Shown one piece after another: positions 6,283 through 54,457 of a stretch of DNA of 54,457 nucleotides (position 1 is its first letter; the number at the start of each line of letters is the position of its first letter). This DNA comes from Macrostomum lignano. Taxonomy: Eukaryota. The stretch spans positions 1 to 54,457 of the forward strand of contig NIVC01004217.1 of NCBI GenBank assembly GCA_002269645.1. Direction: 5' to 3'. The translations under genes were made by a program, and so were the position numbers. Below the pieces are notes generated by a model. That model saw only the letters and a list, made by a program, of their open reading frames with translations, did no database searches and was not told the DNA's origin.

Positions 6283-6467
6283 CTGTAAAAGAATACAACT
6301 CTTAAACAGTGAGGTATGATAATTTTAAGGAATTGAGCATTAATTGTATTTTGCACAAGTCGTAAACACTAAAATCTAATTTTCAATATTCGCAAGCAAA
6401 GTCAGATGTAAGAAAGAAAATTAACTTGTACTATGCATAGAAATTCAATAAAAAATAAAACTCTCAC

Positions 6468-11356: not shown

Positions 11357-13428
11357 CTAGTCCTTCTGCTGCTGCTGCTGCTGCTGCTGCTCCTGTTGCC
11401 GCTGTCTGTACGCAAACTGGGGAACGTGGCCGAGGCGCGAGCACCGGAGCAGGAATGCACGGATTGACAACTCACCAGTGCGGTACTGCGCCCAGTACCG
11501 CTCCACACTCGTTTGCAGACGCTCGTACCGTGCTCTGTGCTGGCGCTCTTGAGCACCCTGGTTCACCAGCGCGGCATGCACTGGCACAAGCTTGGCCTCC
11601 ATGTGCAGCAGGTGCAGGAGTGGGTAGAGTGTCAACTGCACTCTCTCGGCCCGCTGCTTGAGTCTCCGGTGCCAGCCCTCGACCTCGTTGTTGGTACGTA
11701 TTGACTGGCAGTACACACTGACTTCGTGGACTCCGTGGACCGGGTTCGACAGCCAGGTCGCGCTCACGTACTCGGCCAGGTCCAGCAGCAGCGGCGCGTG
11801 CACACCAGCAACGATCTGCGCCAGACCCTCGCCCATGTGCTCGGCCGGCAGGTAGGGGAGCACCATGAGCATGCGAGCGAAGTCGCGGGTGCCAGGATCT
11901 GTCAGATAGGCCTGCTGCAGGCCCAGGTGCTGCAAGCGACGAAATATCGCCTGCGCGAAGTGAAACAGGCAGCCCTGGAACCTTGCAGCCGGAAACACGG
12001 ACCGTAAAGCCTGCCATGCCGCAGCTTCGAAGTCCATGACACAGACCTCCGGCGTCGAGTTGCCCAGTCCCTGTTTCAGTGCAGAGAAGACAGCAGTGTA
12101 GTCATTTACCGACTTACCTGACATTAGTGCGAAAGCCAGAGGAACCTGCTTGATTGTCGTTCCCTGTCGGATGTAGCAGTGCACCGAGTACAGCTGTTTA
12201 AAGGGGGCATGAACGACATCGAAGGTGCCGTCCAGAAACCACAATCTGCGGGAGACAAGCAACTCGATCTGGTTGGATGTGTAAAGAAGCAGATGACGCT
12301 TACCTGAGCCTTCGACTCGGACATCGCTGCGGAGAAAATTCGGAGGCAGATGATCCAAGGCCAGTGCAAACTGGAGGTCGACTGGAGGCTGCGGGCGCTT
12401 AACCTCACGAGACCGATTGGCGATGCGCACCAGCTGATTGATTGGGCCAATGTGCCCGGTCTCCAGCAACTTCGCCTCCACGATTGCTGCAGCCGATCTG
12501 AAGCAGTGCCGCTTCGCGTCCTCCTTGATCTCGGCGACCAATCGGCGCTTCATTCCCTCACGCACTCGTGGTTCGCAGATGTGAGCCGCTTGGCCGCTTC
12601 GAACGTTGCCCTGACTGTCTTCAATGGCAGAAGCCGGGCACTTCAACCTGGAATTGCGTTGGGTGCAGCGCCAATAGCGACTGTTATTCTTTTCGACGTT
12701 CAGCCCCAATACATATTCTCGAGCTCCAATGCGGTGAATAAGTGACGGCTTTTGCTTCTTGGTGCCATTGCGAACAATGACGAATTCCTCTAGATCGTTG
12801 GCCTCATCGATTTCTGGGAGCACCTGAGGCTCCAGACCTTCCATCGAGACTTCAGTGAGACGGACCGGCTCTTGGAAGGGCCCTGCGAGGAAGAAACGTG
12901 TTTTTTAATTTTTTTAAGAGCAGTTCCTAGGGTACTAACCATAATGTCTATAATATTTATTTAAAATTGTTGTCAATTATTTTATTGTAATTAGCCTGAC
13001 TTATTAGAAAAGATATGTTATAGCATATGTTATTAAATATAGAATTTCTCACCTGCTTCGGCAGCATACATTTCGGCCAGTAGACCTGCTGCGTCTTCTG
13101 CCTCCGCCGCAGGCTCCGCCGCAGGCTCCGCCGCAGGCTCCGCCGCAGGCTCCGCCGCAGGCTCCGCCGCAGGCTCCGCCGCAGGCTCCGCCGCAGGCTC
13201 CGCCGCAGGCTCCGCCGCAGGCTCCGCCGCAGGCTCCGCCGCTGGTCTTGCCTGACAAGTGGCACACGACCATACAAACACGTCCTGCCGCATAAGTTGC
13301 CTGTACTCTGCTTGTGAGATTCTAGTCCCACAAGTTCGATGTTGCCACTTTTGGCATGAATCGCACTGTATGGCCTGTTGACGTGGCCGCACAGTCTCTG
13401 AGCACTGAATACACTTATCAGTCTCCAT
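11357..13428 (-). CDS. MULE/Mutator-superfamily DDE transposase with N-terminal PHD finger, (AAEP)n linker and FLYWCH domain; 2 exons (13428-13053, 12882-11357), about 633 aa
   Basis: PHD: CIQC...IQCDSCQKWQHRTC...WSCATC. FLYWCH: YWRC...CPASA...HIC. DDE: FLDGTF, VMDFE..CLFHFAQ, RTNNEVEGWH. Phase-1 GT-AG intron 13052-12883 joins the exons in frame, with no stops. Confidence 0.92.
13100..13241 (-). repeat. 12-bp coding tandem repeat encoding (AAEP) x ~11
   Basis: Identical ggctccgccgca units on the + strand, within exon 1 of the transposase. Confidence 0.95.
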
Positions 13429-14159: not shown

Positions 14160-14317
14160 CGAAGTAACTAACATTCTCAGGTCATTTCGTCAACTGACTA
14201 ATGAACCAATCTAAAACCTTGGTCATTTCGTCAACTGCAAGTGAGACCACCTTAAAATGTTAGTCAATTCGTCAACCCAGTTGACGAACTAGCAGTTGAC
14301 GAAATGACCAGCACCCG
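14160..14317. repeat. Cluster of GTCATTTCGTCAAC / GTTGACGAA motifs resembling a DNA-transposon terminal region
   Basis: Direct and inverted copies of ggtcatttcgtcaactg, ~750 bp upstream of the MULE ATG. No partner copy was found on the other side of the gene. Confidence 0.45.
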
Positions 14318-14777
14318 TCCCTTCTACCTGAGCCTGCTCACATTTCTTAAGCACATAACACTAACAGTATAGCCTACACTAAAGTGTTGGCCTTGAATTA
14401 GAAAGTAAAATATGTAAGTTGGTTTTAAATATATAGAAGGTTAGATGCTATAAATACTAAAATTACTAAATAGTCTGATTTAAAAGCAATGATACTAAAA
14501 TTTTAAACTTCTGGTAAGACATAACCAAGGGTACCAAGGAAGTCGATTAATTTACTAGACCTAGATATCTATTTTTATTCTGGCAATGTGCAAAATGTCA
14601 TCTTGATTCATGAAAGCAGAACTATTGATTTACGGATGCCATGAAGTGGCATTGCTGCTTGCAACAACAATAGATGGTGAATTGATAAAAAGCGAACTGC
14701 CTGCCTAGACGTATCTGTTTCCCCATAGATATTCGTATTGATATTCAATTTCTAACAAAAGCAGCAAAATAAACTAA

Positions 14778-15465
14778 CTTGTACAGCTTGGATTTGCATG
14801 AAAATTTACAGAAATATTATTACACACAAAACAAACGTCTGTGTGAAATTTCAAGTCCATCAGACAACGCAGAGCGGAACAGCGAGAGTTTTAAAGGTGC
14901 TCGTATTTATAATGCATTGTATATGGCGCACAGTATATATACATGTATGCCCGTTTGCAGCACTTGTACAGCTCGGATTTGCATGAAAATTTACAGAAAA
15001 ATTATTACACACAAAACAAACGTCTGTGTGAAATTTCAAGTCCATCAGACAACGCAGAGCGGAACAGCGAGAGTTTTAAAGGTGCTCGTATTTATAATGC
15101 ATATTGTATATGGCGCACAGTATATATACATGTATGCCCGTTTGCAGCACTTGTACAGCTCGGATTTGCATGAAAATTTACAGAAAAATTATTACACACA
15201 AAACAAACGTCTGTGTGAAATTTCAAGTCCATCAGACAACGCAGAGCGGAACAGCGAGAGTTTTAAAGGTGCTCGTATTTATAATGCATTGTATATGGCG
15301 CACAGTATATATACATGTATGCCCGTTTGCAGCACTTGTACAGCTCGGATTTGCATGAAAATTTACAGAAAAATTATTACACACAAAACAAACGTCTGTG
15401 AGAAATTTCAAGTCCATCAGACAACGCAGAGCGGAACGGCGAGAGTTTTAAAGGTGCTCGTATTT
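14778..15465. repeat. ~185-bp tandem satellite, ~3.7 near-identical copies
   Basis: Units start at cttgtacagc at 14778, 14963, 15150 and 15335. Confidence 0.95.
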
Positions 15466-15807
15466 AATAATGAACAAGCTGTTGAAACCCGCGGAATTCC
15501 AATCCCCGGAACTATACTTTTGCTTGTATTCTAAGTCATAAGTCATACTCCAACAAAAACTTGTTAATGACTACGATAAAGGTAAAAATAAAATGGAGTA
15601 CATTCGTGTAAATTTAGGATTTGAGGAAAGCATTGATCTTCTTGGCTGGGGTGCTGCGCAGAACAGAATGTCAGGCAATGTCTGTCTAAAACAAGCATTG
15701 GCAAACTCTGGCCCCTGCCCCTGCCTTTCCCTACGTCCCTTGGATCCTTTGAAACTTCTATCTTCTCTACTGTTTCCCCTCTTATCTCTCGTCTCTCGTC
15801 TCTTCTC

Positions 15808-17248
15808 TCCAACCGAGCAATGCTAATGGATACGACAGGCGCCACTCGAGCCTTAGCGATGAGAAGATGAGCAGAAACATCCTGACGCTCATGATCGATA
15901 ACCCTCAGGTACACGACAGCAGCATATGCTCGTTCACTAGCGTCAGAAAAACCGTGCAATTGCATTTCAATGTGACTGGACTGTCATTGTTAAGGCACGA
16001 CACAACGGTAAAGTTTAAGATTCAACGTCTTGAGTGAATCCAAACAGCGGGTCCATTTTGCTGCCATCTCACTCGGAAGATCATCGTCCCACGGGACTTT
16101 CTGCTTGCAAAGCTGTTGAAACCAGGCTTTGACCAGCGTCACTGCCTGTGTTAGGAACCCAAGTGGGTCAAACAGCTTTGACAAAAGTGGAAGCATCATT
16201 CTCTTAGAGTACCACTGACCTGCGACGGAATCAAGCACTGCAGCGAACTCAGCCGAAAAATGTCTTCATCCGGGTATCAAGCAAGGCCAAGAACTTTCTT
16301 TATTTTACCGACATCCGCTACAGGAAGCGACTTTATGAAATCCGCATGAATGCCGCATGTTCATGCCTGCTTCCGCAAAAATTCGCCACTTCGTCTGAGC
16401 GTACAACTCGCCGGCTTCTTCATCCGAATCGCAACAAGTGACTAAATTGTCCACGTACAGGCTAGTCTTCAAGGTGTTTACAACTGCCGGAGCATCGTCT
16501 TGATGCAGTTCAGGGTGTCGCAATATGGTAGCTCGTAGAATCGCCGGTGAACAAGTTACGCTCGTAGGCCAAAAGGTACTCGACAGAATCTATAATGTAC
16601 GACTTTGTAGGGCTCGTCAGGCTTCATCTCTGTCCACAAGAACCGAAGAGCGTCTCGATCACGCCAGTCAATACCGATTTGAAGGAATGCTTTTTCAATT
16701 TCTGCGAGTACAGCTAAACCGACTTGAGGCGAAAGCGAAGAAGAATCTGGGGAATTAGTGGAAAACACGTAGGCCCCGTCAGAAGAAAGTTGTTGATAGA
16801 GAGGTCTGTGCTGTCCGTCTTTGCTGATCTGTCAAAAACCACGCGTAGCTTCGTGTATTCGCTATTCTTTTTCGTGACGCAGCTGTGGGGTAGATAATGA
16901 ATGATATTTGGCGACTGGTCGCTGCCGTCGACTGGAACTTTCTCGATGATGCCGGCTTGTTATTCTTCTTGTTCGGAAAGAATAGCATCACACTGCACTG
17001 CGCTAGCTGTGCTGGATTACGCTGAAGATGCCGAATGCTCGCCTTTAGCCGAGTTGCCGCTAAATCGAAATGGTCACGCAGGTTAATCGTCTTCTTGGAG
17101 AAACGCCAAGGCAACTGCACAGAATATCGTCCATCATGCAGCTGCGGGTTGCAAGGAAAGACGTCGGACGAAACAGGATGTGGGTCATCTAGAATCCCGA
17201 TTGAGTCCAACCTCCAAAGAGAAGTGAAATCGTCATTTAAGGACTTCG
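15808..17248 (-). mobile_element. Degenerate BEL/Pao LTR-retrotransposon pol fragment (RT and RNase H region)
   Basis: GRYSVQLPW; AEIEKAFLQI; HYRFCRVPFGL; LYVDN; LSKLFDPLGFL..VPWDD; LHGFSDASERAYAAVVY..LLIAKARVAP. Several frameshifts. Confidence 0.92.
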
Positions 17249-17249
17249 A

Positions 17250-18140
17250 CACAGTCTTCCTGACGACGATGACGGCTTTCTGCTGCGGCGACGCGTGGGT
17301 CGACATCAACCGGAGAAGCGGCTCAGCGTGCTTGGCTACGCCGACGACCTCGCCCTGCCGTCTTCGACCGTCGAGGGCGCCCAACGGCAGCTGGAAGGCT
17401 ATTTGCCGTTGCGGCGAGCGTCGGCCTGGTGGTCAACACGCAGAAGACCGTTGTGCTCTGCGTGCCGGACAACATCGAGGCTGCAATATTCTGCCGAGGC
17501 GCTGACGGGCAGGCGACCGAGCTCCCGCGATGTCAGCAGTTCGTCTACCTCGGCGGTCTGGTTCCAGACGCTCGCGAGGACCTGCGACGCCGCCGCGGGC
17601 TTGCCTGGGCTGCCTTTCGTTCTGTGAGGGCAGTCCTGCAGTCCGAGGCCCTACCGCGGACCGCCAGAGGGCGGCGCTGTTCCAGGCGGTAATCGAGACC
17701 GTCCTGCTCTACAACGCCGAGACTTGGACGCCGACGGATTCACTCGAACAGCAACTCGATGCGGCGCACGCTTAGCCTGCTGCGCGCCGCCTTCAACATC
17801 GGCGTCGAGCGAGTCAACAACGCGGCACTCTATCGCCGCGCTGGCCTGCCACGTCCAAGCGATCTACTGCGCCGTCGGCGACTCCAGCTCGCAGGCCATC
17901 TCATCCGCGCCGAGTCGTACTGCTCACAGCCGGTGCAGGAGGTGCTGCTGCTCACGCTGCAGGCACCCTACCGGCGAGGTCAAGCGCGAACTCAGCGTTA
18001 CGTCGACTGTCTGCTGGCTGACGCCGGCGCCCCGGACACTGCCGGTGGCGCGGCCTTTGTTCGCGCCCAAGCCATGAAGCGCGCCCTGTGACGCTGACTT
18101 TTGCCATCCTGACAGCGTATTTTGTTGTTGTTGTTGTTGT
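17250..18140 (+). mobile_element. 5'-truncated RTE-clade non-LTR retrotransposon with (TTG)n tail
   Basis: LGYADDLAL, FVYLGG, RRRGLAWAAF and LLYNAETWT across shifted frames. Stop at 18091, then a (ttg)n tail at ~18119-18140. Confidence 0.88.
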
Positions 18141-26699: not shown

Positions 26700-28075
26700 T
26701 CAGATCGTGTTGACCACCACGCCGACGCTCGCCGCAACGGCAACTAGCCTGTCCAGCTGGCGTTTAGCGCCCTCGACGGTCGAGGACAGCAGGGCGAGGT
26801 CGTCGGCGTAGCCAAGCACGCTGAGCCGCTTCTCCGGTTGACGTCGACCCACGCGTCGCCGCAGCAGAAAGCCGTCGTCGTCGGTGGTAAGAGCAGTCCG
26901 CAGCATCCAGTCAAGCACCAGGACGAACAGGAACGGCGCCAGCGTATCTCGCTGAAGCACTCTGGAGGATGTCTCAAACGAGTCCGATAGGACGTCCGGT
27001 TTTGTCACAGCAGCTGTCGTATCACGGTAAATCGCCATGATGGCGGAGATCAGCTGCTCAGGCAGGTTGTACGTGCGAGCACCATTGGAAGCACGGCTCT
27101 GACAACCGAGTCGAAAGCCTTCTTGAAATCAATAAAGATTAGAATCAGGATCGACTGGCGAATCCGCGCCTCCTCGATGACTCGGCGAAGAGCCAGGATC
27201 TGCGCCACTGTGCCGCGATGGGGCCAGAACCCGTTCTGCTCTGGGCGCAGGTACGGATCCAGCACGGGTTGCTACCGCGAAAGCAGCATCTGGTTGAATA
27301 GCTTCGCTGCACAGGACTGAAGGCAGATGCCTCGATGGTCTTCAAGCCTAGTGGTGCCCGGCTTCTTTGGAACAGCGACGATGTGCGCCGTGGTCCATTC
27401 GTTGGGCCTCACCGAAGAGCACGCGGTTCATCACTCTGGCGACCTCGATCAGCGGCCACAAGGGGATGCGCAGCGCCTCGATGGCACCTCGTCCGGACCC
27501 AGCGCTTTCCCGCCCGGTGACTGCTGGGCGAGCTTGACAACGTCGGCTGCGTTAACTGGGGCTACGCTGAAACTCTCCTCTGCCGGCAACGGCGTCTCCG
27601 GCGGCAGCGTCAGACTGTCTGGCAGCGGGGGTGGCGGCGCGTTGACGATGGCGGCGAAGAACTCGCGCAGCTCGTTCCTGCGCTCGTCCGGAGTGTCACC
27701 AGACAGGTTCAGCGGATTGCGCAGCTTTCGCCCCGTCAGAGCGTTGATGGCGGACCAGGCCACGCGCCCTCTGGCATCGGGCCCAGCGGCAGAGACAAGC
27801 CTGAATGGCGTCATCGACAGCCGCTTGTTGGCGCTGCACTGCAGGTAGACAGCCGCCAGTGCTGCCTCTGCCTCGCGGATTGGTCGCCTGCTCAAGCGGA
27901 GCCTCTCTAGATCTTCCCTCGCTGCCTGAATCGCGGGGTCATTCTGCCAGACCGGCTGCCCACGTTAAGCCAGTTGCATCATCGGGACTGCTTGCTCCGC
28001 GGCGGTTCTGACTGCAGCGCACACTTCCGCATACTTGGCACTTCCACGCAGCTTGTCGCCCAGCGCAGTGTTAAA
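26700..28075 (-). mobile_element. Internal fragment of the same RTE-clade family (RT N-terminal half through YADD), truncated at both ends
   Basis: LDPYLRPEQNGF..RGTVAQILALRRVIEE, FIDFKKAFDSV, QRDTLAPFLF, LGYADDLAL. It overlaps the 17250 copy by ~210 bp at high identity and is flanked on both sides by degenerate aatcccagatcc repeats. Confidence 0.9.
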
Positions 28076-30788: not shown

Positions 30789-31686
30789 ATGAAAAGTAAT
30801 TTAATTTTACTCTTTCTGGGCTCATTGTTTATTTACGGTGAATGTCAGCAGAAAGTTCTTCTCTCTAGCGTGCAATCAATAACACTCCACAGTGAAAAGT
30901 TTACCACAGCGCGGAGAGGATCGCCAATACCTCAACTTCGTTGCATTCCAACTGTTATACCTTGTAAATCTCTTCCAAGCACAGTGCAATGTTACAATAA
31001 AGGAACGGATGGACTAGACGTGCAGTGGAAATGCGAGGCTCAATTGCCAAAAAGTGTTCAGTTCGACACAATACAGGTAAGCTAAATAGTTTTTAGATGC
31101 TACAGTTTATGTTTAAGAATAATGACAGAGTAACATTGCATTGCAGGTCAGCTGTGAAGGCTACGATCACCCATCTGATCCCTACATTCTTGCTGGCTCT
31201 TGCGGTTTGACGTTCTCACTGAAGCCAACTGGAATTCATCATCACAAGCATAGTCATCATGGACATCACCACCATCATCAGCACAACGCGCACTATGAAG
31301 TGCACACTGTGCGAAGTAGTGCCACGGTGCCAATTATTTCCGGCATACTATTGGTAGTTGTGCTGATTGGCCTAGTGTTACTAGCCTACAGAATTTGTCC
31401 CTGCCATCCGACGCATCCGACAATGCTTAGCGACACTCCGCCGACCTATTATTGTCGAACTCAGTACAAACCGCTGGTCGATGAGTGCAGCGGCGGCCAC
31501 AACGGTCCTGGTTTTTGGACAGGAGCGGCAATTGGCGGTGCTGCTGGATACCTGGTTGGCAGCTCGGGCCCGACGGTGGCTGATACGACAGTTGTCCAGA
31601 CATGCGTGATATCATCTGACGATGATTCCTGCGATGAAGACGAAGTCGTAACATCGGCCGGCTACGCGTCGACCTGGAGACGATAG
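30789..31686 (+). CDS. SARAF: Store-operated calcium entry-associated regulatory factor (SARAF/TMEM66); 2 exons (30789-31076, 31147-31686), 275 aa
   Basis: Signal peptide; KVLLSSVQSITL..TTARRGSPIPQLRC..VQCYNKGTDGLDVQWKCEAQL..VSCEGYDHPSDPYILAGSCGL; one TM helix; GPGFWTGAAIGGAAGYLVG; C-terminal GYASTWRR. 70-nt phase-0 GT-AG intron. Confidence 0.95.
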
Positions 31687-42383: not shown

Positions 42384-43934
42384 TTAAATAATCGACGAAT
42401 TCAGCCGGAAATTCGGCTCCGAGTTCAGCTGCTGGTGACCAGACAGTGTGGCGTCGAATTCGCCCTCGTAATCTTCGTCATCGTTATCCACTTTGACATC
42501 AAGATCGAGGTCGTCCTCGGATTTCGGATCGGCGGAGGCCTGCAGGTTAGGGGTGGCGACCGAGTTTTTGAAAGGCCATTTGAGGACAGGGAGATGATGA
42601 TAAATGAGGTCATTCAAGGATGAGGAAATATATGCCATGAAAGGTCGATATTTAGAGACACGAACAGGGGTCGGGTCATTTAAGTGCACGGACAGGGGTC
42701 ATGTAGGACAAGACAAGGGGTTATTTAGGGACATGAGTATTGGTCATTTAAGGTCACAAACATCATGACGGTATCACATGTTTAGTTGCACGCATATAAA
42801 GTGGTGAGTCATACATTAACATGGGTTGATAAAATTTCCCAGCTCACCGATCGATTATAGCCTAGCCGGGAGTCGGTCTCGCCATCTCGACTATCGTCGT
42901 TGCCCCCAGCCAGCGATGCGGCTAAACAAGCGGCCACATCGAAGGCGGTTGTAGCGGCAGCAGCGTTAGCAGCAGTCCTACTACCCATAGTATTGCTGCC
43001 TAACACAGCAGCGCCGGTAGTATTCGCCAGTGGAAAATAAATTTTGCTAGCCACCACCGTCTGCTTCTGCTGCTGCTGCTGGCTGTCAGAGCCGGTCGCT
43101 CCCGATGCCGGGTATCGCCGACGGCCGGAACGGGCGCGCAGCTGCGGCTCCCCTGCACTCAGGCGTCTCTGCGCGAGAGATAAGAATAGGAAAGGGGTCA
43201 AATGAGGACAATAATTCTAAGCAGAGGTCATTTCAGGACAAAAGTCTACCCTGGGGTCAGTTGAGGACAAAAATCAACCCTGGGGTCAGTTGAGGACAAA
43301 AGTCTACCCAGGGGTCATTTGAGGACAGAATCTATCCGGAGGTCATTTGAGGACAAACTAATATACGTAAAGATCATTTGAGGGCAAACATCTACCGTGG
43401 GGTCATTGAAGACAGAGGTTATTTGGGGCAAAAAAAGTGCGCAGGGGTCAACTGTCCTTACCTGGCCAACAGTTGTGACGGCGGCGGCGGAGGCGGCGCA
43501 CCACCCCGTCGGAACAAGGCGGCAGCGTCAGCGCCTTTGACAGTCGCCGATTGGCCCGCCTGGGTCGGCCGCCGAGATCGCCAAGACTGGGCGACATGGA
43601 CGACGCCTGCTCCGTCGAAGACTGCTGCGGCAGAGTTGTTGTTAAAGAGTCGGTGGCCATCGACGCGGCAGCGGCGACGGCGGCTGCGGCCGTGGCGTCG
43701 AGTAGAGGCTGGTCCAAGACAACGGCTGCCGACAGCTGCTGGCGAGAGCAGACGGCTCGACTCGAAGGCTCTGCTGGCAGGCGCGGCAACAGCTGCGCCG
43801 AATGATGGAGCGCAGTTTAGCCGAACGATCGCGCTCCGCAAGGACCTGCAATTGCAGCTGCATGCGAAGATTGGTCAGGTCCATCTGGAGGTCGTCCACA
43901 CGATGCAGGCGTTTCTCGTAGTGCTGCCGAATCT
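42384..43934 (-). CDS. 3' exons of a DLK/LZK (MAP3K12/13, wallenda)-like kinase gene: second leucine zipper plus low-complexity tail (exons 43934-43462, 43168-42848, 42539-42384)
   Basis: EIRQHYEKRLHRVDDLQMDLTNLRMQL aligns by eye to the DLK/LZK zipper [27 protein letters not shown]. GT-AG sites are present, and the last two exons join in phase 0. The frame within the first exon is broken (TAA at 43642), so this part of the model is uncertain. Kinase exons are not in the window. Confidence 0.6.
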
Positions 43935-44288
43935 CTGGGGGCGAAAGAAATGACAAGAGACTGTTAGGCGGCAAACAAGGACACAGGACTTCTAGAGGTT
44001 AAAGGACACAAAAGGTCTCTTAGAGGTCGAATGAGAACACAGAACTATAAGGGTAAAATGAGGACACAGGACTGTTAGGGGTCAAATGAGGACACGGGAC
44101 TGTTGAGGGTCAATTGAGGACACGGAGCTGTTATGGGTCAAACTAGGACACGCGGGGACTGTTGTTGTGATAAGTTTTTGCATCATGTAGCAAACAGACC
44201 ATGGCACATTTGCACTAATGCACCATATCTAGACCAGCAGTATCTGAAATAGAAGCAAAAGCCATTTATAAGATAATATACATGTAGG

Positions 44289-44580
44289 TCAGTGAAGCAA
44301 ATATCTAAAATTGTTAACAGAACTATAAAAGAAAAATGAACAAGAAAAAATGGTGCTCAGTTAGCCGATTCTAAAAGTGAATCGTGGATCCCCTGAGCCA
44401 CGAAGAGGCCGAACACCGTTCAGGGGGTTAATCCATAGTTCACTTTGCAGAGCAAAACAAATTCCACAGCACAGTAAACAGTGCACAGCGGTCTTTTGCA
44501 GCATTGAACTAAGGATCAATCCCGCCACTAAGAGCGGGAAGCCACAGCAAGAAATGCAAAGCGGCCAGCTTTTTGAAAGC
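44289..44580. repeat. 292-bp direct repeat, copy 1 (3' of the SET gene)
   Basis: Matches 48269-48560 (offset 3980) with one substitution seen (aactata vs aagtata). Confidence 0.95.
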
Positions 44581-44648
44581 CGATAAAATCTTATAGCGAA
44601 CTCCCCATGCAACGGGGGCTTATGGTTTCAGAGAATAAACTTAGCCTT

Positions 44649-46687
44649 TCAGTCTTTAAGCCACGGATGCAGTCGAAGCACATCCGATCGCCTTTCTCCA
44701 TAATCGTAGAGTAGCTCCTCGCCTCGAGCAATGTCTCGAATGGCTTGGAAGACCAGATGCGGTTTATTGTTTACATCAGCAACAATCGGCTTCAAGTTAT
44801 TTCTTCGCCGGCTATGGTTAATGTACCGACCGACGTACTGGAAAGTGTTGGTTGCGTCGATGCAATAAGCTTGATCTCGCCAGGAAAAGAAAAACAAGAA
44901 GCAGCATGGCTTCCCTTGCTTTACAATATCTTCCTCCCGGGCGAGGCGTGCTTTTTGTCCTTGGATTAATTCTCCACCGTAAGTACAGACGACAGTGCCT
45001 TTTGGGAGGTCCGTACGGGCAAATGCCCCCAGACCCTCTGCGTCGACGCTACCGGCCTGAACCACGACGTTGCCGGTAGAAATCATTGTCTGTCGAACCA
45101 CATCGGCCATAGTGAGTTGCCTCATAGACGCCATTTCGGTCGGCAGGGATCGCTCTGGACTCCCACGGCTAGCTCGGCCGTGAGGCGTCACGTGAAGGAG
45201 CGGCGTGCATGCTCCGTCCGGAGTTGTGATAGTGTCCGGGACTAGACGCTCGCGATTAGCTGCCATTGCAGGAGGGGCAACCGCAGCAGCGTGGCTATTT
45301 GAGTCCTCAGACGAAGTCACAGTCGGCTCGAAAGGCGGATCATTGGACAGGCCATCTTTATTGGCTTCTCCTCTTTGGAGCCGAACGCTAAGGGGAACCT
45401 GACAATGAAGAAAATGAAGAGGACAAATGATTCATAGTGGTAACGGCATACAAATGCAGATTAACCCCAACGCTTTAATCTTTGCATTGAATAAACATGC
45501 AACAAAATTGTTCCTAAGAACACTGTTTCACACAATAAACTGTGGACTTCATTTAGTTTGACCAACTTACTTCATTGGAGGTCGCCGGTACAGCGTCGGT
45601 AGATAAGGCGACGTCTATAGTTGCAGCAGCGGCAGACTCCGGGACCAGAAGCTCGCGATTAGCTGCCATTGCAGGAGGGGCAACCGCAGCAGCGTGGCTA
45701 TTTGAGTCCTCAGGCGAAGTCACAGTCGGCTCGAAAGGCGGATCATTGGACAGGCCATCTTTATTGGCTTCTCCTCTTTGGAGCCGAACGCTAAGGGGAA
45801 CCTGACAGTGAAGAAAAAAGTACATCATAATGGTTACAACATGCAATTAAAGATGAACGTAACCCTTTGTTATTTTCATTAAACATACATGCAACCCAGC
45901 TGATGGTAAGATAATTGCTCTACACCATAAACCATGGGCCAGCATAAAAGACCCCACCCCTTGTTGTTAATCCCTAATATTTCCTTTTGAGCAAAGTATC
46001 TAAAAGCTTTTATTTATTCATTTTTCACTTTCATCTTCTCAAATTTACCAAACATTCAACTTTTTAAGAAAAGTTGCGACCTGACCTGACCCGCGACCTG
46101 ATGCTTTCAAGGTTACAGGCCGCAGCGTTTTAACAACAAAAAACCATGGACACAAATTTTAGTTTAACACACCTCATTGGAGGTCGCCATTTCAGCGTCG
46201 GTAGCTAAGTCCGCGTCCATTGTTATAGCGGCGGCAGATTCCGGCAGGCTTTCAAGCGGCAAGGCTGGATTAAGATTTAGTTGAGGCCGGATGCCGTAAA
46301 AGGCCAACAACCGCAGGCCCTCAATTCTGTCATATGCCCTTGCCCTCGCATCAGCTACGGCTGCACGGCCGACAACAAATGCTTCGCCGAAATGGCACAG
46401 CCGCATGTGTTGTCTCATATTAGAGGCGGCAAATGAGCTGCACAGCTGGCAAAGCTTTAAATCTCTTTTGCCATGCCAACGTTTGTAGAGAATGTAGGCT
46501 TCGACTCGATCGTAGTTTGCTGTATGCTTGCTTCGAGCGTGTCGAAGGAGGGTGGCGGACCGATTGGTGGAATAGTCACACATCGGGCAAATAAACTGGT
46601 CAGGGTCCATATTGAATTGATTCAAGTTTTCAACGTAAACGTTTAGAGTAAAATTTAGTTCTCGATAAAACGTGTCGCGCAAACTTT
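44649..46687 (-). CDS. C2H2 zinc-finger plus SET8/PR-Set7 (KMT5A)-like SET-domain protein; exons 46687-46172, 45801-45571, 45398-44649
   Basis: SET: GLGAFARTDLPKGTVVCTYGGELI..YCIDAT..GRYINHS..PHLVFQAIRDIARGEELLYDYGER..HPWLK, close to SET8 including its HPWLK end. ZnF: CPMC..HARSKH and CQLC..HMRLCH. Phase-0 GT-AG joins. The 5' start is not resolved. Confidence 0.88.
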
Positions 46688-46972
46688 CTGAAAATGAGGA
46701 AAAATCAAAATGAAACCTTTAACTACGGTGAAAGATGAATGAACTAGGCATCTTGGTAATAGGTACTTTACAATGCACTCTTAAAGACTGTCAGACTGAA
46801 AGCAAAGAAGGCATGTTCCGCTCGCTCGTAGTCTCAGGACAATAATAAAAGGCAGCTGAACAGATCAAATCAAATGTTTATTTGAAAGGTTGGGCGATAC
46901 AACGGACTTGATAACGCATTACAGTCCCGAATTTCTGCATAGTAGCATTAAGTTGCCAGTCACACTGAAGTT

Positions 46973-47590
46973 TTAAAGCAAATCGAGTAGTGAAACGGAA
47001 TTCGAAATTGTAGGATTTGCATTTTGTTGCAACGAAACGCTGGGAGAAGCTGGATTAAAAAAGCCATTGAAATCATTGTCTAACGTAGTTACACTACAAC
47101 TGTGGCAGGGGCATGTACAATGGCTATCAGGGCAATTGAAAATGTTTGAACGTAAAACACTTGGACCGGAGAGCTGTGAATCGGCACACTTTTCGGAGGG
47201 GTTCCTGGCGGCTAGTGATTGCAGCTTAGAAATTAAAACTTCAGCGTTTTCTTTAGCCTCGTCTAAGTTATAGGTAGATTGCGAATTTCCATTTGTCTTA
47301 GATTGCTTTCCATGTTTTACCCTAACATGGCTTGGTAAATTCGAAGTGATAACACTGCAAACAGGACACTGATAGAGGTAACCCGATTCGGTTCGCTTCT
47401 TTGCCTTTAAAAGTCCAAAAAGGCGGATTGTGGCATCAATTTGCTCTTCAGTGGCATCAGGGTGCTTTCGATTGCAATGTACCTTGAAACCAGATGCGCG
47501 TCCTGTCCAAGCATTGCAGATCAAACAGGAAATCTGCGTATGAACCTGCACCATGTGAGACATTGTCCCGCGGGTGACATTCAAGAGCAT
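46973..47590 (-). CDS. Two-C2H2 zinc-finger ORF (205 aa)
   Basis: CLIC...HCNRKH and CPVC...HVRVKH, followed by a Cys/His cluster CPDSHCTCPCHSC. Its linkage to the SET gene is unresolved. Confidence 0.65.
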   Translation of the reverse strand: MLLNVTRGTMSHMVQVHTQISCLICNAWTGRASGFKVHCNRKHPDATEEQIDATIRLFGLLKAKKRTESGYLYQCPVCSVITSNLPSHVRVKHGKQSKTNGNSQSTYNLDEAKENAEVLISKLQSLAARNPSEKCADSQLSGPSVLRSNIFNCPDSHCTCPCHSCSVTTLDNDFNGFFNPASPSVSLQQNANPTISNSVSLLDLL

Positions 47591-48268
47591 CGGGAAAACG
47601 TTGTGGGCTTATTATTATACTGCTTCCAGGGAGGTTAGGCAAATTAAGTCTTAATTTTTGTATTCTAAGACAATGACGGAGAGGAAATGCTTTAGAGTAT
47701 AAAAAATTCTGAATCTCACATCTGAATCTCCTATCCTCTGATCGGAACCAGGTCTATCTTCCAACATGAACATCCTTTCCTCTCAACTGAAACCCTCGAG
47801 TCCGAGTCAATAAGGCTACAGGCCAAGCAGGGTGCCATTAGTTAGTGTGGGCAGTTACATTTTCAATCTCCCCAGCCAAGCCTAAAGTGCTGCTATAAAT
47901 GGGATAATGAGTGCATGGCGGGATGGGTCACTGCTATTGCTTATGGTTAACACGTAACAAAAGTAAAAGACAAAAATGTGTATATCACGATTACTAGTTC
48001 CACTTTTATTATACTTTCGCGCTATCTTTGAAGCAGTATGCAAATATACTATTGGCATAGCGGGCGTCTAAACGCAGGCTAACATAAGAGAACTGACAAA
48101 TTGCAGTGAGTGTCAAAGTGTAGTACAACGAAAAGGGACAAAAGTAAGACGCATATGCGCCTCTCGCTGCAACGACAGGCGACTGCATATAAATGCATGA
48201 AATATTAAGTAATACAAACGAGAGAATAAAACACATTCAAGAAAGTTGCTCGTAGTTATAAATTTCAA

Positions 48269-48560
48269 TCAGTGAAGCAAATATCTAAAATTGTTAACAG
48301 AAGTATAAAAGAAAAATGAACAAGAAAAAATGGTGCTCAGTTAGCCGATTCTAAAAGTGAATCGTGGATCCCCTGAGCCACGAAGAGGCCGAACACCGTT
48401 CAGGGGGTTAATCCATAGTTCACTTTGCAGAGCAAAACAAATTCCACAGCACAGTAAACAGTGCACAGCGGTCTTTTGCAGCATTGAACTAAGGATCAAT
48501 CCCGCCACTAAGAGCGGGAAGCCACAGCAAGAAATGCAAAGCGGCCAGCTTTTTGAAAGC
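48269..48560. repeat. 292-bp direct repeat, copy 2 (3' of the KDZ gene)
   Basis: Near-identical to 44289-44580; starts ~105 bp after the KDZ stop codon. Confidence 0.95.
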
Positions 48561-48665: not shown

Positions 48666-51526
48666 TTACATCCGAAATATGATTATCCTATGGATAACAG
48701 TTTCAAGTAATCGAGTTTCGGAATTAAATACTATCAATCCATTCTTCATCTGACTCAGACTGCTCACGACTTGATTCAACGTCTGAATGACTCGGGCTTC
48801 AACGTCATCTGGCTGATTTACGTTGGTACCAGCGTCGTTTGGATGCTGCGCATCAGCAGCAGCAGCTTCAATGCTTGCGTCAATGTGATCAAAGCGAAGA
48901 GCTTGAAGTTGCTTTAAAATAGTCTGAAAGAGGCATCGAAACTGGGCTGGCAATCCAGGTTGATGATGGAGTGTTTCACAGTGCTGTTCAAGTTTAATTT
49001 GAACGTCACGCCACTCTTGCACAATAATGATCTTTTCCTCCGCTAGACGATTCAGCTTGTGATACAAGTCAACCACCCGTCGCTTGAACCTCTCAGACAC
49101 ATCGATCGAAAGACCGAAGTAGAAGTCTGACTGGAAGTCGCGAAGCTGAATCATAGTGGGCACGCGAAGGCCTGGCGGAAGCGAGGCGGGCGCGCCATTC
49201 GAATGTCTGCATTTAAAGCCGCAACCTTGCGTAGAACATGCTCGATTTTCTTTTTGTCCATCTGAGCAGCCACTCTGACGGATCCAATAGAATCGTTCCA
49301 AAGCAAGTGCCTTAAGCTTTGCGTAAGGTTCCCTGCTCAATGGAGAGTCGCTATTGGGATTTATGGCTTCTGCATGCCATTGTTGAGCAAGATTTAAAAT
49401 GGCTACCTCAGAGATTGCAGGAATAGTTAATTTGTTGTTCCGCATCAAATCGCCAGCTTGTAGAAGCAATTGCTCCATTTCAGCTGAACAAGACGCGGCT
49501 GTGCGAGTTATTAGTTTTAATCGAGCAGAAAACCAATTGGAGGCGTACAACAACTGATTAGCATTGAAGCAATGCAAAATGTAAGACATACAAGCACTTC
49601 TGCGATCGGACCGCATGTACTTTAAGCTTTTACCAAACGGTCGTAGTGCAGACCAAGCGCGCTCCGTATTCTCCCGTCGCAAAGACCCGCTCCAGGAGTT
49701 ACCCGCACGGAGTACTTTAGTTGGCATTGTCTCTCGGCCCAGCACATGAAAGGCGTTCACAGCGCACGTGACACTGTTAAGCTGTACACCAGATGCTGAC
49801 ACCATGGACTTGACACGATTGGAAATGCGACAACCTGATTTTAGGAAAAAGTTTTAAATGAATAAATAATTGAGCTTCGTGTCGCAGTACGCATGCACGT
49901 ACATAAGTAAGCACAAGCATAAGTAAGCACACACTATAAGTGTATAGTGTAAATAAGTGCAGCATGATAGAAACACGATAAAAATCAACTCACCAACATC
50001 ATAGATAAAAATGAGATCCTTTGAGACGGGCTGTGTCATTAGGTAATGACGAAGAGTCTGTTCTGGATAGCACAGGCCCTCACCAGCTGTAATAATGTTG
50101 CAACCTGTCAGAAGCCTGTTATGCCGGCAAAATAAGCCAAAGAAACCGTTGACATCGTGCTTGCTGGCCCTGATCACGGGTTTTTCTGTTCCAGCCTTCC
50201 AGTTAGTGCAGCCTTCTGCAGACACTTGTGTCGTAGGAGGCGGTACAGTTGCTGGTTCTACATGAATAAGCGGTGACGGCAATGAGCGTTCAGAATCTGG
50301 CACTAGACGTTGCTTCGAACCCATACTTTGTAGTCTTCGCCATCCAAATAGAGCATCAGCACAAACTACAGACTTCCGACTTGAATTTTGGTCAGGACAC
50401 AAAAGACAACTAGCAGGCCAGCTTGCTGAACACCTCTGCAACTCTCGAAACCGCAGTAGGACTCCATTACGCTGCAATCTCTGATACACTCGATCGGCTA
50501 AACCAGGGTTCCAGCGACCTTGTCCTACGACGGAGCCTTTGAAAAGACAGGTAATTGCACGAGACAGTGGCAGTTGACCGTCAAAGCACAAGGAGTCAAG
50601 AGTTGATAGAAAGCTAATTGAAAAAAATGTTAACAATTCGCCAACGCGTGACTCGCTTCCAGGAAAGTATCCTTTTGCTAGCATGGCATCAACTTTATCA
50701 CAGGATTGGCACGTATAAATTCTGGCGCAAACAATTCCGTTGATGTCAATAATCTGAATTTCGGATGATGTTGTAAACTCAGAAGACAAGCTTGATTCGC
50801 TACAGCAGAATAGAGAGACAGGCTCTTCTTCTTGAATGTCTTCAAACATTAGCGATTGAGCCTAGGAAAAAGGGTTAAATTTTGTATGCGGTGTTATAAA
50901 AATATTATTCCGTACTAAGGCTATTAGCATTCTAAATACTTTTGTTTCACGTCAAATTTAATACAGCGTTATACTGCCAAATAGGCGTCATTGTTTTCTT
51001 CACAGTAAACTAATATCCTTAGAAATTGCAATTTAGATTTTAAAACAACTTACATTCCACTGGAGGAACTTGTGAGCAGCAAAATTTCCATGCGTTATCT
51101 TTTTACAATCACTGCAGACATCGTACTGACAATGAACGCATCGGAAAACTCCAGGCTGCATGTCGCAACGAACACAGCATTTTAACTCGAATGACTGTTT
51201 ATAACCGGCAGTGTAACTTTCCACAATGGCCGTGTAGTCTTCCCATTCCGTGAATTTAGGCGGCTGTTCAAACTTATTACTAATCTGTTCAGGCATAGAG
51301 TCATGGTTTCCTGCACCCAGATCTTGTGAAAGACTGCCGCCAGTGACTGTGGAACACGAGGAAGCCGTGGCAATCGATGTAGTACTTTCCAATGCATTGC
51401 ATTAGACGTTCGCAATATCCTTGGCCTTCCGCGTTGGCCAGTCATCAGTACTACTTCAGATTGTCTTTTCTCGATTTCGCATTTAGTTTTCTTGACGAAA
51501 TCATTGCTGAAATTCGTGAGGATCAT
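48666..51526 (-). CDS. KDZ (Kyakuja-Dileera-Zisupton) transposase gene with AT-hook-like, B-box-like and CxC cysteine clusters; exons 51526-51054, 50861-49994, 49834-48666; contains frame lesions
   Basis: GRPR; CVRC..FRCVHC..CSDC..H..H..WN; IIDINGI..C..C..GYFP; CLLCP..CADALFG; GFFGLFCRH..GE..YP; YDVG|C spliced across intron 2; FH..G(H)..CQLKYS..GAG..DGE..ERAWS recovered through two compensating shifts. Splice phases 0 and 1 match. Confidence 0.85.
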
Positions 51527-54349: not shown

Positions 54350-54457
54350 CAAGAAGGCCCAAACCAGCCCTAGGAAGCTCAAAACTAGCCCTGGAAAGCT
54401 CAAACTAGCGCCTGGAAAGCTCAAATTGGCGCGCGGAAAGCTCGAATTGGCGCCGGA
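54350..54457. repeat. ~21-bp degenerate tandem repeat running off the window end
   Basis: ggaagctcaaaactagccct-like units. Confidence 0.75.

What the first reader, a model, noticed from the sequence alone, without database searches (positions are those of the whole stretch)
44289..48560. The same 292-bp sequence follows both the transposase gene and the SET gene
Seen: two copies 3980 bp apart, one substitution noticed, each starting 70-105 bp downstream of a stop codon on the minus strand. R contains small hairpins (cgattc-taaaagt-gaatcg; cccgc-cactaaga-gcggg). Inference: a very recent event. Either the element end was duplicated while capturing the SET cassette, or both genes share a common 3' processing module. 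The direct repeats would also let the 4-kb cargo loop out or amplify by recombination.
Basis: partly seen in the sequence, partly recalled or inferred. Interest (0 to 1): 0.7.

Follow-up and report, generated by a model that had tools for sequence, protein, structure and literature searches.

The report
Repeated gene-end module with ribozyme-like fold
In a flatworm transposon-like gene cluster, the same 292-bp stretch follows both the transposase gene and its partner histone-methyltransferase gene. It folds like a self-cleaving HDV-type ribozyme, so it may cut their shared transcript, but cleavage has not been tested.

Summary
R is 292 bp at window 44289-44580 and 48269-48560, with one mismatch and sharp edges. 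The window is a whole contig of Macrostomum lignano. R lies on the sense strand 105 nt after a KDZ (Kyakuja-Dileera-Zisupton) transposase stop codon and 68 nt after the stop of a zinc-finger/KMT5A-like SET gene.

All six near-identical copies of this unit carry both R copies, so it is not a misassembly. These copies count as only one independent observation.

A sister family (transposase 46% identical) has the same three genes. It has its own unrelated 553-bp repeat after each gene. That repeat starts inside the transposase coding tail, carries the AATAAA signal and shows gene-conversion mosaics. One copy of that family has lost SET plus one repeat.

SET was therefore not recently captured. 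Repeated gene-end modules are a property of this lineage, and they do mediate cassette loss.

New finding: R contains a complete HDV-like ribozyme fold (P1, P2, P3/L3, P1.1, P4, catalytic C). The Rfam score is sub-threshold, and the sister repeat has no such fold. Cleavage is inferred and not shown. No covariation test was possible.

The parts
48269..48560 (-). R copy B, the 292-bp module. It starts 105 nt downstream of the KDZ transposase stop codon and lies upstream of the ZNF ORF.
   Evidence: Identical to both R copies in L001 and L003-L006.
44289..44580 (-). R copy A, the 292-bp module. It starts 68 nt downstream of the SET stop codon. It carries one private substitution at 44323.
48332..48406 (-). 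HDV-like ribozyme candidate in copy B (75 nt, sense strand). P1 48406-48400 pairs with 48376-48370. P2 48397-48391 pairs with 48338-48332. P3 48389-48387 pairs with 48379-48377. L3 is 48386-48380. P4 48364-48359 pairs with 48351-48346. J4/2 is 48345-48339, with the putative catalytic C at 48344. The predicted cleavage lies between 48407 and 48406.
   Evidence: Rfam RF02682 matches the full model at 21 bits, with a gathering score of 44. My own descriptor hits only the R copies in 535 kb. Its false-positive rate is 7 per 6 Mb and 0 per 6 Mb.
44352..44426 (-). HDV-like ribozyme candidate in copy A, identical in sequence to the one in copy B. The predicted cleavage lies between 44427 and 44426.
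48409..48499 (-). Long imperfect hairpin of about 90 nt, immediately upstream of the predicted cleavage site. The same hairpin occurs in copy A at 44429-44519.
   Evidence: Minimum-free-energy fold of the R sense strand, z = -4.3.
48666..51510 (-). KDZ transposase gene. Exon 3 is 49834-48666 and exon 2 is 50861-49994. The N-terminal B-box/CxC exon ends at 51054. Its start near 51510 is inferred from L001, and in the window this exon is frame-disrupted.
   Evidence: Pfam KDZ scores 119 bits on the full-length homologue P0001. Splice sites were read from the sequence. The homologues are M. lignano B-box proteins.
46973..47590 (-). ZNF ORF (205 aa) with a pair of C2H2-like zinc fingers. It is the orthologue of the third gene in the sister family.
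   Evidence: 31% identity, E = 6e-12, to the L002 ORF at 15239-16057.
44649..46610 (-). ZnF-SET gene. Exon a is 46610-46173, optional exon b is 45801-45571 and exon c is 45398-44649. The SET domain is KMT5A/SETD8-like.
   Evidence: Pfam SET, E = 3e-20. Gene model. PDB KMT5A, E = 2e-26. Orthologous to the family-2 SET gene.
42384..44288 (-). Region downstream of R-A. It contains arrays of a 28-29-bp motif and a small annotated gene (98 aa in sister loci). It is not conserved in the sister family.

Best explanation
R is the gene-end (intercistronic) module of a three-gene KDZ transposon-like unit of Macrostomum lignano: transposase, zinc-finger protein, and zinc-finger/KMT5A-like SET methyltransferase. 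The unit appears to be transcribed as one precursor RNA. The same module sits shortly after the transposase stop codon and again after the SET stop codon.

In this family the module carries a 75-nt HDV-like self-cleaving ribozyme fold on the sense strand. The most likely mechanism is that the nascent RNA cuts itself about 260 nt past the transposase stop codon and about 222 nt past the SET stop codon. That would separate the transposase part, the ZNF-SET part and whatever lies downstream. In effect it makes a 3' end for the upstream message and a 5' end for the downstream one.

The two copies are identical either because the duplication is young or because the copies convert each other. As direct repeats they can also recombine and delete the cassette between them.

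Shown: the repeat; its position relative to the stop codons; its presence in all copies; the analogous repeats, conversion mosaics and SET-less derivative in the sister family; and a sequence that satisfies every structural requirement of the HDV fold.

Inferred: co-transcription (from annotation names), self-cleavage, and its role.
For: 1. Repeat and positions.

2. All six family-1 loci have R at both sites, and 11 of the 12 copies are identical.

3. The sister family (L002, L008, L009) has an unrelated 553-bp repeat after KDZ and after SET, plus a partial copy after ZNF. There is no R-R' similarity. The first R' copy begins 46 nt inside the KDZ coding sequence, so the module was copied from the transposase 3' end.

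4. R' holds AATAAA 80 nt after the KDZ stop codon. The same signal lies 192 nt after the SET stop codon, and ATTAAA lies 115-140 nt after the ZNF stop codon. R has no canonical signal, and none follows SET for 2.3 kb.

5. The modules lie at most about 140 nt from the upstream stop codons, but 175-680 nt from the next start codons.

6. Conversion mosaics in family 2: a 42-nt remnant at 88% identity beside the 100% tract, and a roughly 205-nt perfect core in the third copy between diverged flanks.

7. L007 equals L002 minus SET and one R'.

8. HDV-like fold: P1 7 bp, P2 7 bp (a pseudoknot that Rfam does not score), P3 GCC/GGC, L3 UCUUCGU, P4 6 bp, J4/2 GCUAA. My descriptor hits only the R copies in 535 kb and has a low random rate. 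It recovers the bacterial RF02682 consensus. The P1.1 pairs U:A plus C:U are exactly those of the fast C. briggsae ribozyme. The important L3 G and the A three nt after the catalytic C are both present (PMC13635239; PMC4908430 and PMC3774820).

9. KDZ and SET share transcriptional-unit name prefixes (Mlig022522g1/g3; Mlig001681g4/g6/g7). In this annotation a shared prefix marks genes cut from one unit or cluster of units, and many units are polycistronic precursors (PMC5730564).
Against: 1. The Rfam score (21 bits) is far below the gathering score (44). In a 10-kb scan its E-value is 2.5, and a clearly spurious riboswitch hit scores better.

2. I wrote my descriptor after seeing the candidate.

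3. All R copies are identical, so no covariation test is possible. The six loci differ at only 0.26% of sites, and R's invariance among them is not unusual.

4. The sister family's repeat has no ribozyme of any Rfam class and no descriptor hit. A ribozyme therefore cannot explain the shared architecture, which could be purely structural (duplication plus gene conversion).

5. Weak poly(A) variants exist: UAUAAA 32 nt after the KDZ stop codon and 19 nt past R-A. Conventional 3' ends are therefore not excluded.

6. Co-transcription rests on name prefixes, not on reads that I could inspect.

7. A ribozyme-made mRNA 3' end lacks a poly(A) tail, which would normally destabilise a message.
Confidence: 0.5

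Rival explanations
1. R is a passive internal duplication. A piece of the transposase 3' flank was copied behind the SET gene by replication slippage or unequal recombination, and it stays identical through youth or gene conversion. It has no function, and the HDV-like fold is a chance match.
For: The Rfam score is sub-threshold and at noise level in a 10-kb scan. The sister family shows the same architecture without any ribozyme. Gene conversion is directly visible in that family. Other internal duplications exist in the same cassette, such as exon b. The six copies are too similar to show constraint.
Against: Two families with unrelated repeat sequences both place the repeat within about 140 nt of stop codons, and in family 2 it supplies the poly(A) signals. 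That points to use, not accident. The full HDV geometry, including a 7-bp P2 pseudoknot and a validated type of P1.1, is expected by chance in R at about 7e-4 or less.
Confidence: 0.28
2. R is mainly a 5' module for the gene that follows it: a promoter, or the outron and trans-splice acceptor for ZNF-SET and for the small downstream gene. It is not a 3' module for the gene before it.
For: R lies between genes, so both readings fit. Its sense-strand 3' end is a pyrimidine-rich tract with UUAAC followed by UUUUAG. M. lignano trans-splices widely (PMC5730564). In retrotransposons HDV-like ribozymes serve the downstream RNA (PMC3774820).
Against: The distance to the upstream stop codon is short and consistent, while the distance to the next start codon varies from 175 to 680 nt. 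The last copy in each family is followed by unrelated sequence. R' begins inside the KDZ coding tail and carries poly(A) signals.
Confidence: 0.1
3. R marks a transposon 3' end. The internal copy would be an alternative terminus, so the transposase could move either a short unit (ending at the first R) or a long unit (ending at the second R).
For: The last repeat copy coincides with the downstream limit of what the two families share. A conserved 20-bp repeat array lies upstream of both families and could hold the binding sites of the other end.
Against: No terminal inverted repeats or target-site duplications could be found. Homology between copies runs well past R-A. R has no similarity to the upstream region. 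The repeats are direct, not inverted.
Confidence: 0.07
4. R is an independent small mobile element (SINE or MITE), or a small Pol III gene on the plus strand, that landed twice. Alternatively, R is an assembly artefact.
For: The plus strand of R has TATAAAA, an A-box-like GGTGCTCAGTTAGCC and a T5 run.
Against: There are no target-site duplications around either copy. There is no tRNA and no Rfam family. There are no other copies in 267 kb. The sister family's analogue includes the transposase coding tail. Six contigs show the same structure.
Confidence: 0.04

Closest known systems
HDV-like (delta-like) self-cleaving ribozymes. Examples are Rfam RF02682, the C. briggsae ribozyme, the R2/RTE/L1Tc retrotransposon ribozymes, and the phage theta ribozymes.
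   Same: The nested double-pseudoknot layout and helix lengths are the same. So are the L3 U...G signature, the catalytic C-N-R-A in J4/2, and the U:A plus C:U P1.1 seen in the C. briggsae crystal structure. Like theta ribozymes, it sits just downstream of a functional RNA, where cleavage would make that RNA's 3' end (PMC10879173).
   Different: It is not at the 5' end of a retrotransposon and not in an intron. It lies in a duplicated intergenic module of a DNA-transposon-type gene cluster, downstream of protein-coding genes. It is below the Rfam threshold, and its activity is untested.
Retrozymes: direct repeats that each carry a ribozyme and flank a cargo, giving circular RNAs.
   Same: Two direct repeats of about 300 bp, each with a self-cleaving-ribozyme motif in the same orientation, delimit a unit. 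Double cleavage would release a 3980-nt RNA with 5'-OH and 2',3'-cyclic phosphate ends (PMC4918200).
   Different: Retrozymes use hammerhead ribozymes and have non-coding cargo of 0.3-1 kb, 4-bp target-site duplications, a primer binding site and a polypurine tract. Here the motif is HDV-like, the cargo is 3.7 kb with two intron-containing protein genes, and none of those retroelement marks is present.
KDZ (Kyakuja-Dileera-Zisupton) DNA transposons with accessory chromatin genes, such as the fungal TET/JBP-carrying elements.
   Same: A KDZ transposase with B-box/CxC cysteine clusters is tightly linked to a chromatin-modifying accessory gene on the same strand (PMC12730594).
   Different: The accessory genes are a KMT5A-like SET methyltransferase and a zinc-finger protein, not TET/JBP. 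The host is a flatworm. The element ends are undefined. I found no report of repeated gene-end modules for KDZ elements in the papers I read.
Operon-like polycistronic units resolved by spliced-leader trans-splicing in M. lignano.
   Same: Several genes lie on one transcriptional unit with processing signals between them (PMC5730564).
   Different: The intercistronic signal proposed here is a ribozyme in a duplicated module. Neither trans-splice sites nor poly(A) sites could be inspected.
Concerted evolution of, and deletion between, direct repeats, as in solo-LTR formation.
   Same: There are conversion tracts with older diverged edges, and there is a derivative with one repeat and no cargo.
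   Different: The repeats are not LTRs. They are the 3' flanks of different genes inside one unit.

Membership tests
HDV-like self-cleaving ribozyme | Nested double pseudoknot: P1 (about 7 bp) pairing immediately 3' of P3/L3, P2 closing the outer pseudoknot, and P4 optional. | tested here: met
   P1 is 7 Watson-Crick bp. P2 is 7 bp with one G-U pair. P3 is 3 bp. P4 is 6 bp. J1/2 is 2 nt. The layout follows PMC4908430 and PMC3774820.
HDV-like self-cleaving ribozyme | Core nucleotides: L3 with a leading U and a G at position 6; a catalytic C in J4/2 followed by N-R-A; P1.1 of one or two pairs. | tested here: met
   L3 is UCUUCGU and J4/2 is GCUAA. P1.1 is U:A plus C:U, the same as in the C. briggsae structure (PMC13635239).
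HDV-like self-cleaving ribozyme | Score at or above an Rfam family's gathering threshold. | tested here: not met
   RF02682 scores 21 bits against a threshold of 44. E = 0.11 in a 441-nt scan and 2.5 in a 10-kb scan.
HDV-like self-cleaving ribozyme | Compensatory base changes in the helices among homologues. | not testable with these tools
   All 12 copies have an identical ribozyme. The locus of the intermediate subfamily (P0014) could not be retrieved.
HDV-like self-cleaving ribozyme | Site-specific self-cleavage 5' of the first P1 nucleotide. | not testable with these tools
   This needs in vitro transcription or mapping of RNA ends.
Retrozyme / LTR-type element | Target-site duplication around the unit, a primer binding site after the 5' repeat and a polypurine tract before the 3' repeat, with non-coding cargo. 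| tested here: not met
   The flanks are GTATTTCA...CCTACATG, which is not a duplication. There is no primer binding site or polypurine tract. The cargo holds two protein genes with introns.
SINE/MITE | Dispersed copies, each with its own target-site duplication. | tested here: not met
   R occurs only at the two fixed positions in 267 kb, and neither copy has a duplication. Genome-wide copy number was not testable.
KDZ DNA transposon | A KDZ transposase domain. | tested here: met
   PF18758 scores 119 and 110 bits on the full-length proteins.
KDZ DNA transposon | Defined termini (terminal inverted repeats or CA..TG ends) and 7-8-bp target-site duplications. | tested here: inconclusive
   No terminal inverted repeats were found. 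Homology between copies runs beyond the fetched flanks and into satellites. The criteria come from PMC12730594.
Polycistronic trans-spliced unit (M. lignano) | Several genes on one assembled transcriptional unit, with trans-splice and poly(A) sites between them. | tested here: inconclusive
   KDZ and SET share a unit-name prefix in both families. The naming rule is given in PMC5730564. The reads and sites themselves were not available.
Gene conversion between direct repeats | A tract of perfect identity bounded by older, diverged homology. | tested here: met
   This is met in family 2 only: a 553-bp tract at 100% next to 42 nt at 88%, and a third copy with a roughly 205-nt perfect core. Family-1 flanks show no residual homology.

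The most novel reading that the evidence does not exclude
The two R copies are active HDV-like ribozymes that cut a polycistronic transposon transcript at both ends of the ZNF-SET cassette. This would release a 3980-nt RNA with 5'-OH and 2',3'-cyclic-phosphate ends. That RNA could be used as a non-polyadenylated message protected by the long hairpin, or ligated into a protein-coding circular RNA. It would be a retrozyme-like design built with an HDV-type ribozyme inside a DNA transposon. It would also be the first case of ribozyme-based mRNA end formation in an animal gene cluster.
Probability: 0.15. Interest if true: 0.85.

Novelty: new variant of a known kind. Interest (0 to 1): 0.6.

Why it matters
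HDV-like ribozymes are widespread in animals, but outside retrotransposon 5' ends and the CPEB3 intron their roles are mostly unknown. A copy placed just after each of two coding regions of one transcriptional unit would be a concrete, testable case of a ribozyme acting as a gene-end or intercistronic processing signal.

The host is a laboratory flatworm with transgenesis and with public 3'-end and RNA-seq data.

Independently of the ribozyme, the comparison shows that this KDZ lineage carries a KMT5A-like histone methyltransferase and a zinc-finger gene as long-standing partners. It also shows that each family keeps one repeated module behind its genes, that these modules evolve in concert, and that they cause loss of the cargo. 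This is a small, clear model of how multi-gene transposon units are organised and how they decay.

Tried and rejected
1. The arrays of the 28-29-bp motif GGGGTCAnnTGAGGACA as inverted subterminal transposon repeats. All lie on one strand downstream of R-A, so this was rejected.

2. R as homologous to R'. There is no similarity.

3. A ribozyme as the feature shared by both families. This was rejected: R' and the whole family-2 intercistronic span have no ribozyme hit.

4. R's invariance among the six copies as evidence of constraint. This was rejected: the copies differ at 0.26% of sites, and 56% of 292-bp windows have no variable site.

5. A hidden third R copy after ZNF1 or after the small downstream gene. 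None was found.

6. Element termini. No terminal inverted repeats were found, and the L006 breakpoint at 53461 has no inverted partner.

7. A third KDZ-SET family. The profile search found only SET-only relatives without a KDZ gene (L012, L013). The P0014 locus is not on record.

8. R on the plus strand as a tRNA-derived SINE or Pol III gene. It has no tRNA, Rfam or target-site-duplication support.

9. The sequences of the crystallised ribozymes, for a direct comparison. The supplements are not held. The review PMC3256349 is not held either.

10. A literature search for the gene IDs found nothing.
Full report
**1. Observation**

The repeat is real. Copy A is 44289-44580 and copy B is 48269-48560, 3980 bp apart. 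Each is 292 bp, with one internal mismatch (44323 C versus 48303 G). Both edges are sharp, and the 300-nt flanks on either side show no residual similarity. A 48-mer from R occurs twice in the window against 0 expected.

The genes are on the minus strand. A KDZ (Kyakuja-Dileera-Zisupton) transposase ends at 48666, 105 nt before copy B. A SET-domain gene ends at 44649, 68 nt before copy A.

**2. Organism and copies**

The transposase matches Macrostomum lignano proteins. The window is itself a whole 54,457-bp contig of assembly GCA_002269645.1.

Five other contigs carry the same unit of at least 13 kb: L001 and L003-L006. All have R at both positions with the same spacing, and 11 of the 12 copies are identical. 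This rules out a misassembly.

These copies differ at only 28 of 10,668 aligned sites, and 56% of 292-bp windows have no variable site. R's invariance among them therefore says nothing about constraint, and the six loci count as one observation.

**3. The cargo is old, not captured recently**

A second family (L002, L007-L011) has a transposase only 46% identical. It has the same partners:
- a ZnF-SET gene, 35-37% identical over both the finger region and the SET domain;
- a zinc-finger ORF, 31% identical, E = 6e-12.

The SET domain is KMT5A/SETD8-like, E = 2e-26, aligned to the C-terminal end.

Gene order differs between the families. Family 1 is KDZ-R-ZNF-SET-R. Family 2 is KDZ-R'-SET-R'-ZNF-partial R'. 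Downstream of the last repeat the two families share nothing.

**4. The sister family has its own repeated module**

In L002, R' is 553 bp at 12466-13018 and 14299-14851, 100% identical. A third copy follows ZNF. R and R' show no similarity.

R' copy 1 begins 46 nt inside the transposase coding sequence. That coding tail is carried, non-coding, behind SET. The module was therefore copied from the transposase 3' end.

R' contains AATAAA 80 nt after the KDZ stop codon. The same signal lies 192 nt after the SET stop codon, and ATTAAA lies 115-140 nt after the ZNF stop codon. R' is therefore the polyadenylation module of all three genes.

The 100% tract is bordered by 42 nt at 88% identity with a 14-nt indel. 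The third copy is a roughly 205-nt perfect core between weakly similar flanks. This is the footprint of gene conversion laid over an older duplication.

L007 lies convergent to L002 on the same contig. It equals L002 minus SET and one R', with the junction inside the repeat. SET-bearing copies are the majority, and the deletion needs only one step. Recombination between the repeats is therefore the simplest reading.

**5. What R itself contains**

R has no canonical poly(A) hexamer. After KDZ the first AATAAA is 654 nt past the stop codon, beyond R. After SET there is none for 2.3 kb. Only weak UAUAAA variants occur: 32 nt after the KDZ stop codon and 19 nt past R-A.

A permissive Rfam scan of R gave a full-length match (positions 1-74 of 74) on the gene-sense strand to an HDV-like ribozyme model, RF02682. 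The score is 21 bits against a gathering score of 44, with E = 0.11. In a 10-kb scan E = 2.5, and a spurious riboswitch hit scores better. The covariance score alone is noise.

What the model does not score is more telling. The 75-nt stretch (48406-48332, and 44426-44352) has these elements:
- P1: CCCCUGA/UCAGGGG
- J1/2: AC
- P2: GGUGUUC/GAGCACC (7 bp, the outer pseudoknot)
- P3: GCC/GGC
- L3: UCUUCGU
- J1/4: AUCCA
- J4/2: GCUAA

These match the published requirements:
- cleavage at the first P1 nucleotide, a core formed by L3 and J4/2, and P1.1 of one or two pairs (PMC4908430);
- a P1 of about 7 nt pairing just 3' of P3/L3, an important L3 G, and a catalytic C plus a constrained A (PMC3774820).

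I had marked the P1.1 (U:A plus C:U) as a weakness. It is exactly the P1.1 of the crystallised C. briggsae ribozyme, which is among the fastest known (PMC13635239).

An explicit descriptor of this fold hits only the 12 R copies in 535 kb of real sequence, counting both strands. In random sequence it gives 7 hits per 6 Mb at the loci's composition and 0 per 6 Mb at R's composition. A chance hit inside R is therefore expected at about 7e-4 or less. The descriptor recovers the bacterial RF02682 consensus.

Caveats: I wrote the descriptor after seeing the candidate. No covariation test is possible. The sister family has no ribozyme of any class.

The R sense strand folds unusually well (z = -4.3). 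A hairpin of about 90 nt ends two nucleotides before the predicted cleavage site.

**6. One transcript?**

In the source annotation, genes cut from one transcriptional unit (or from one cluster of units) share a name prefix. About 7% of units are polycistronic precursors with several trans-splice sites (PMC5730564).

The transposase and SET genes share prefixes in both families: Mlig022522g1 and g3, and Mlig001681g4, g6 and g7. An older gene model (P0011) even splices KDZ exon 2 to SET exon 2. This suggests co-transcription, with R and R' at the intercistronic positions. I could not inspect the reads.

**7. Interpretation**

The shared property of the two families is a repeated module placed within about 140 nt of the stop codons. 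It is kept uniform within a unit and differs between families. In family 2 it is plainly the 3'-end (polyadenylation) module. In family 1 it lacks a canonical signal and instead has an HDV-like fold.

My best reading is that R is a gene-end or intercistronic processing module that works by self-cleavage, with confidence 0.5. The main rival is a functionless duplication with a chance ribozyme-like match (0.28).

Lesser rivals are a 5' module for the next gene, an alternative transposon end, and a SINE or an artefact.

Natural precedent for 3'-end processing by HDV-like ribozymes exists in phage theta ribozymes (PMC10879173). The layout of two ribozyme-bearing direct repeats around a cargo resembles retrozymes (PMC4918200). 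The retroelement marks are absent, however, and the cargo is coding.

**8. Limits**

The element ends were not found. The genome-wide copy number of R could not be measured, because the collections that can be searched by DNA do not hold this genome. All functional statements about cleavage are inference.

Noticed in passing
window 45235-45414 vs 45638-45817; 45564-45642 vs 46166-46244: The SET gene contains a chimeric duplicated exon (exon b, 45801-45571). It is made of the first 180 nt of exon c (98% identical) joined to the last 79 nt of exon a with its splice donor (80% identical). It is in frame, so it could be a cassette exon. Sister-locus gene models of 409 aa versus 486-497 aa differ by it.
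   Followed up: partly
window 54353-54457; L001 5475-7162; L002 871-7319: A satellite built from the 20-bp unit GGCGCCAATTTGAGCTTTCC, in 138/158-bp higher-order repeats, lies about 2.7 kb upstream of the transposase in both families. It is about 80% identical at nucleotide level between families, although the transposases are only 46% identical. It occurs in one orientation only and is absent downstream. It may hold binding sites or be a preferred target.
   Followed up: partly
window 42574-42756, 43194-43357, 43959-44151: Arrays of a 28-29-bp motif (GGGGTCAnnTGAGGACA), all on one strand, lie between GC-rich coding-like blocks downstream of R-A. The motif has 22 matches against 4 expected in the window.
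   Followed up: partly
window 44649-46610 and 46973-47590: The SET protein is KMT5A/SETD8-like (the H4K20 methyltransferase family) and is fused to an N-terminal pair of C2H2-like fingers. The separate ZNF ORF has a weakly similar finger pair. A histone methyltransferase as a long-standing partner of a KDZ transposase was not mentioned in the KDZ papers I read.
   Followed up: partly
window ~51054-51526: The N-terminal (B-box/CxC) exon of the window's transposase is split over two reading frames relative to L001. The window's own protein is 759 aa, against 830 aa in L001. This is either a real frameshift or a long-read indel error.
   Followed up: no
L002 and L007 (contig NIVC01001431.1, 58779-102823): Two family-2 units lie tail to tail on one contig, separated by a 387-bp satellite. 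One arm has SET and the other lacks it. The downstream parts are 99.9% identical, while the alignment spanning the upstream satellite and transposase side is 97.3% identical.
   Followed up: partly
P0011 (ML2-assembly gene model), corresponding to L002 ~11300 and 13735: This gene model joins transposase exon 2 (ending ...LLIYDV) directly to SET exon 2 read out of frame. It is either a cross-gene splice isoform or an annotation artefact.
   Followed up: no
window 255-6298 (-), 11357-12844 (-), 31141-31686 (+): The rest of the contig holds a Helitron Rep/helicase ORF pair, a MULE transposase with a FLYWCH finger, and a fragment of a SARAF-like gene. No non-LTR retrotransposon is present.
   Followed up: no
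window 17255-17440 and 26706-26892: A long inverted repeat (arms of 141 and 45 nt, 92-96% complementary) lies 9.3 kb apart. It may mark the ends of another large element.
   Followed up: no
L003 5329-8660 (at window ~52840): L003 carries a 3.3-kb nested insertion. It has terminal inverted repeats (CCCAGTGAGCT...AGCTCACTGGG) and an apparent ACTAG duplication, and it is absent from the window.
   Followed up: no
window 48269-48560 (+ strand): On the strand antisense to the genes, R shows TATAAAA, then about 25 nt later a tRNA A-box-like GGTGCTCAGTTAGCC, and a T5 run near its end. It has no tRNA or Rfam support, so this is probably coincidental.
   Followed up: yes
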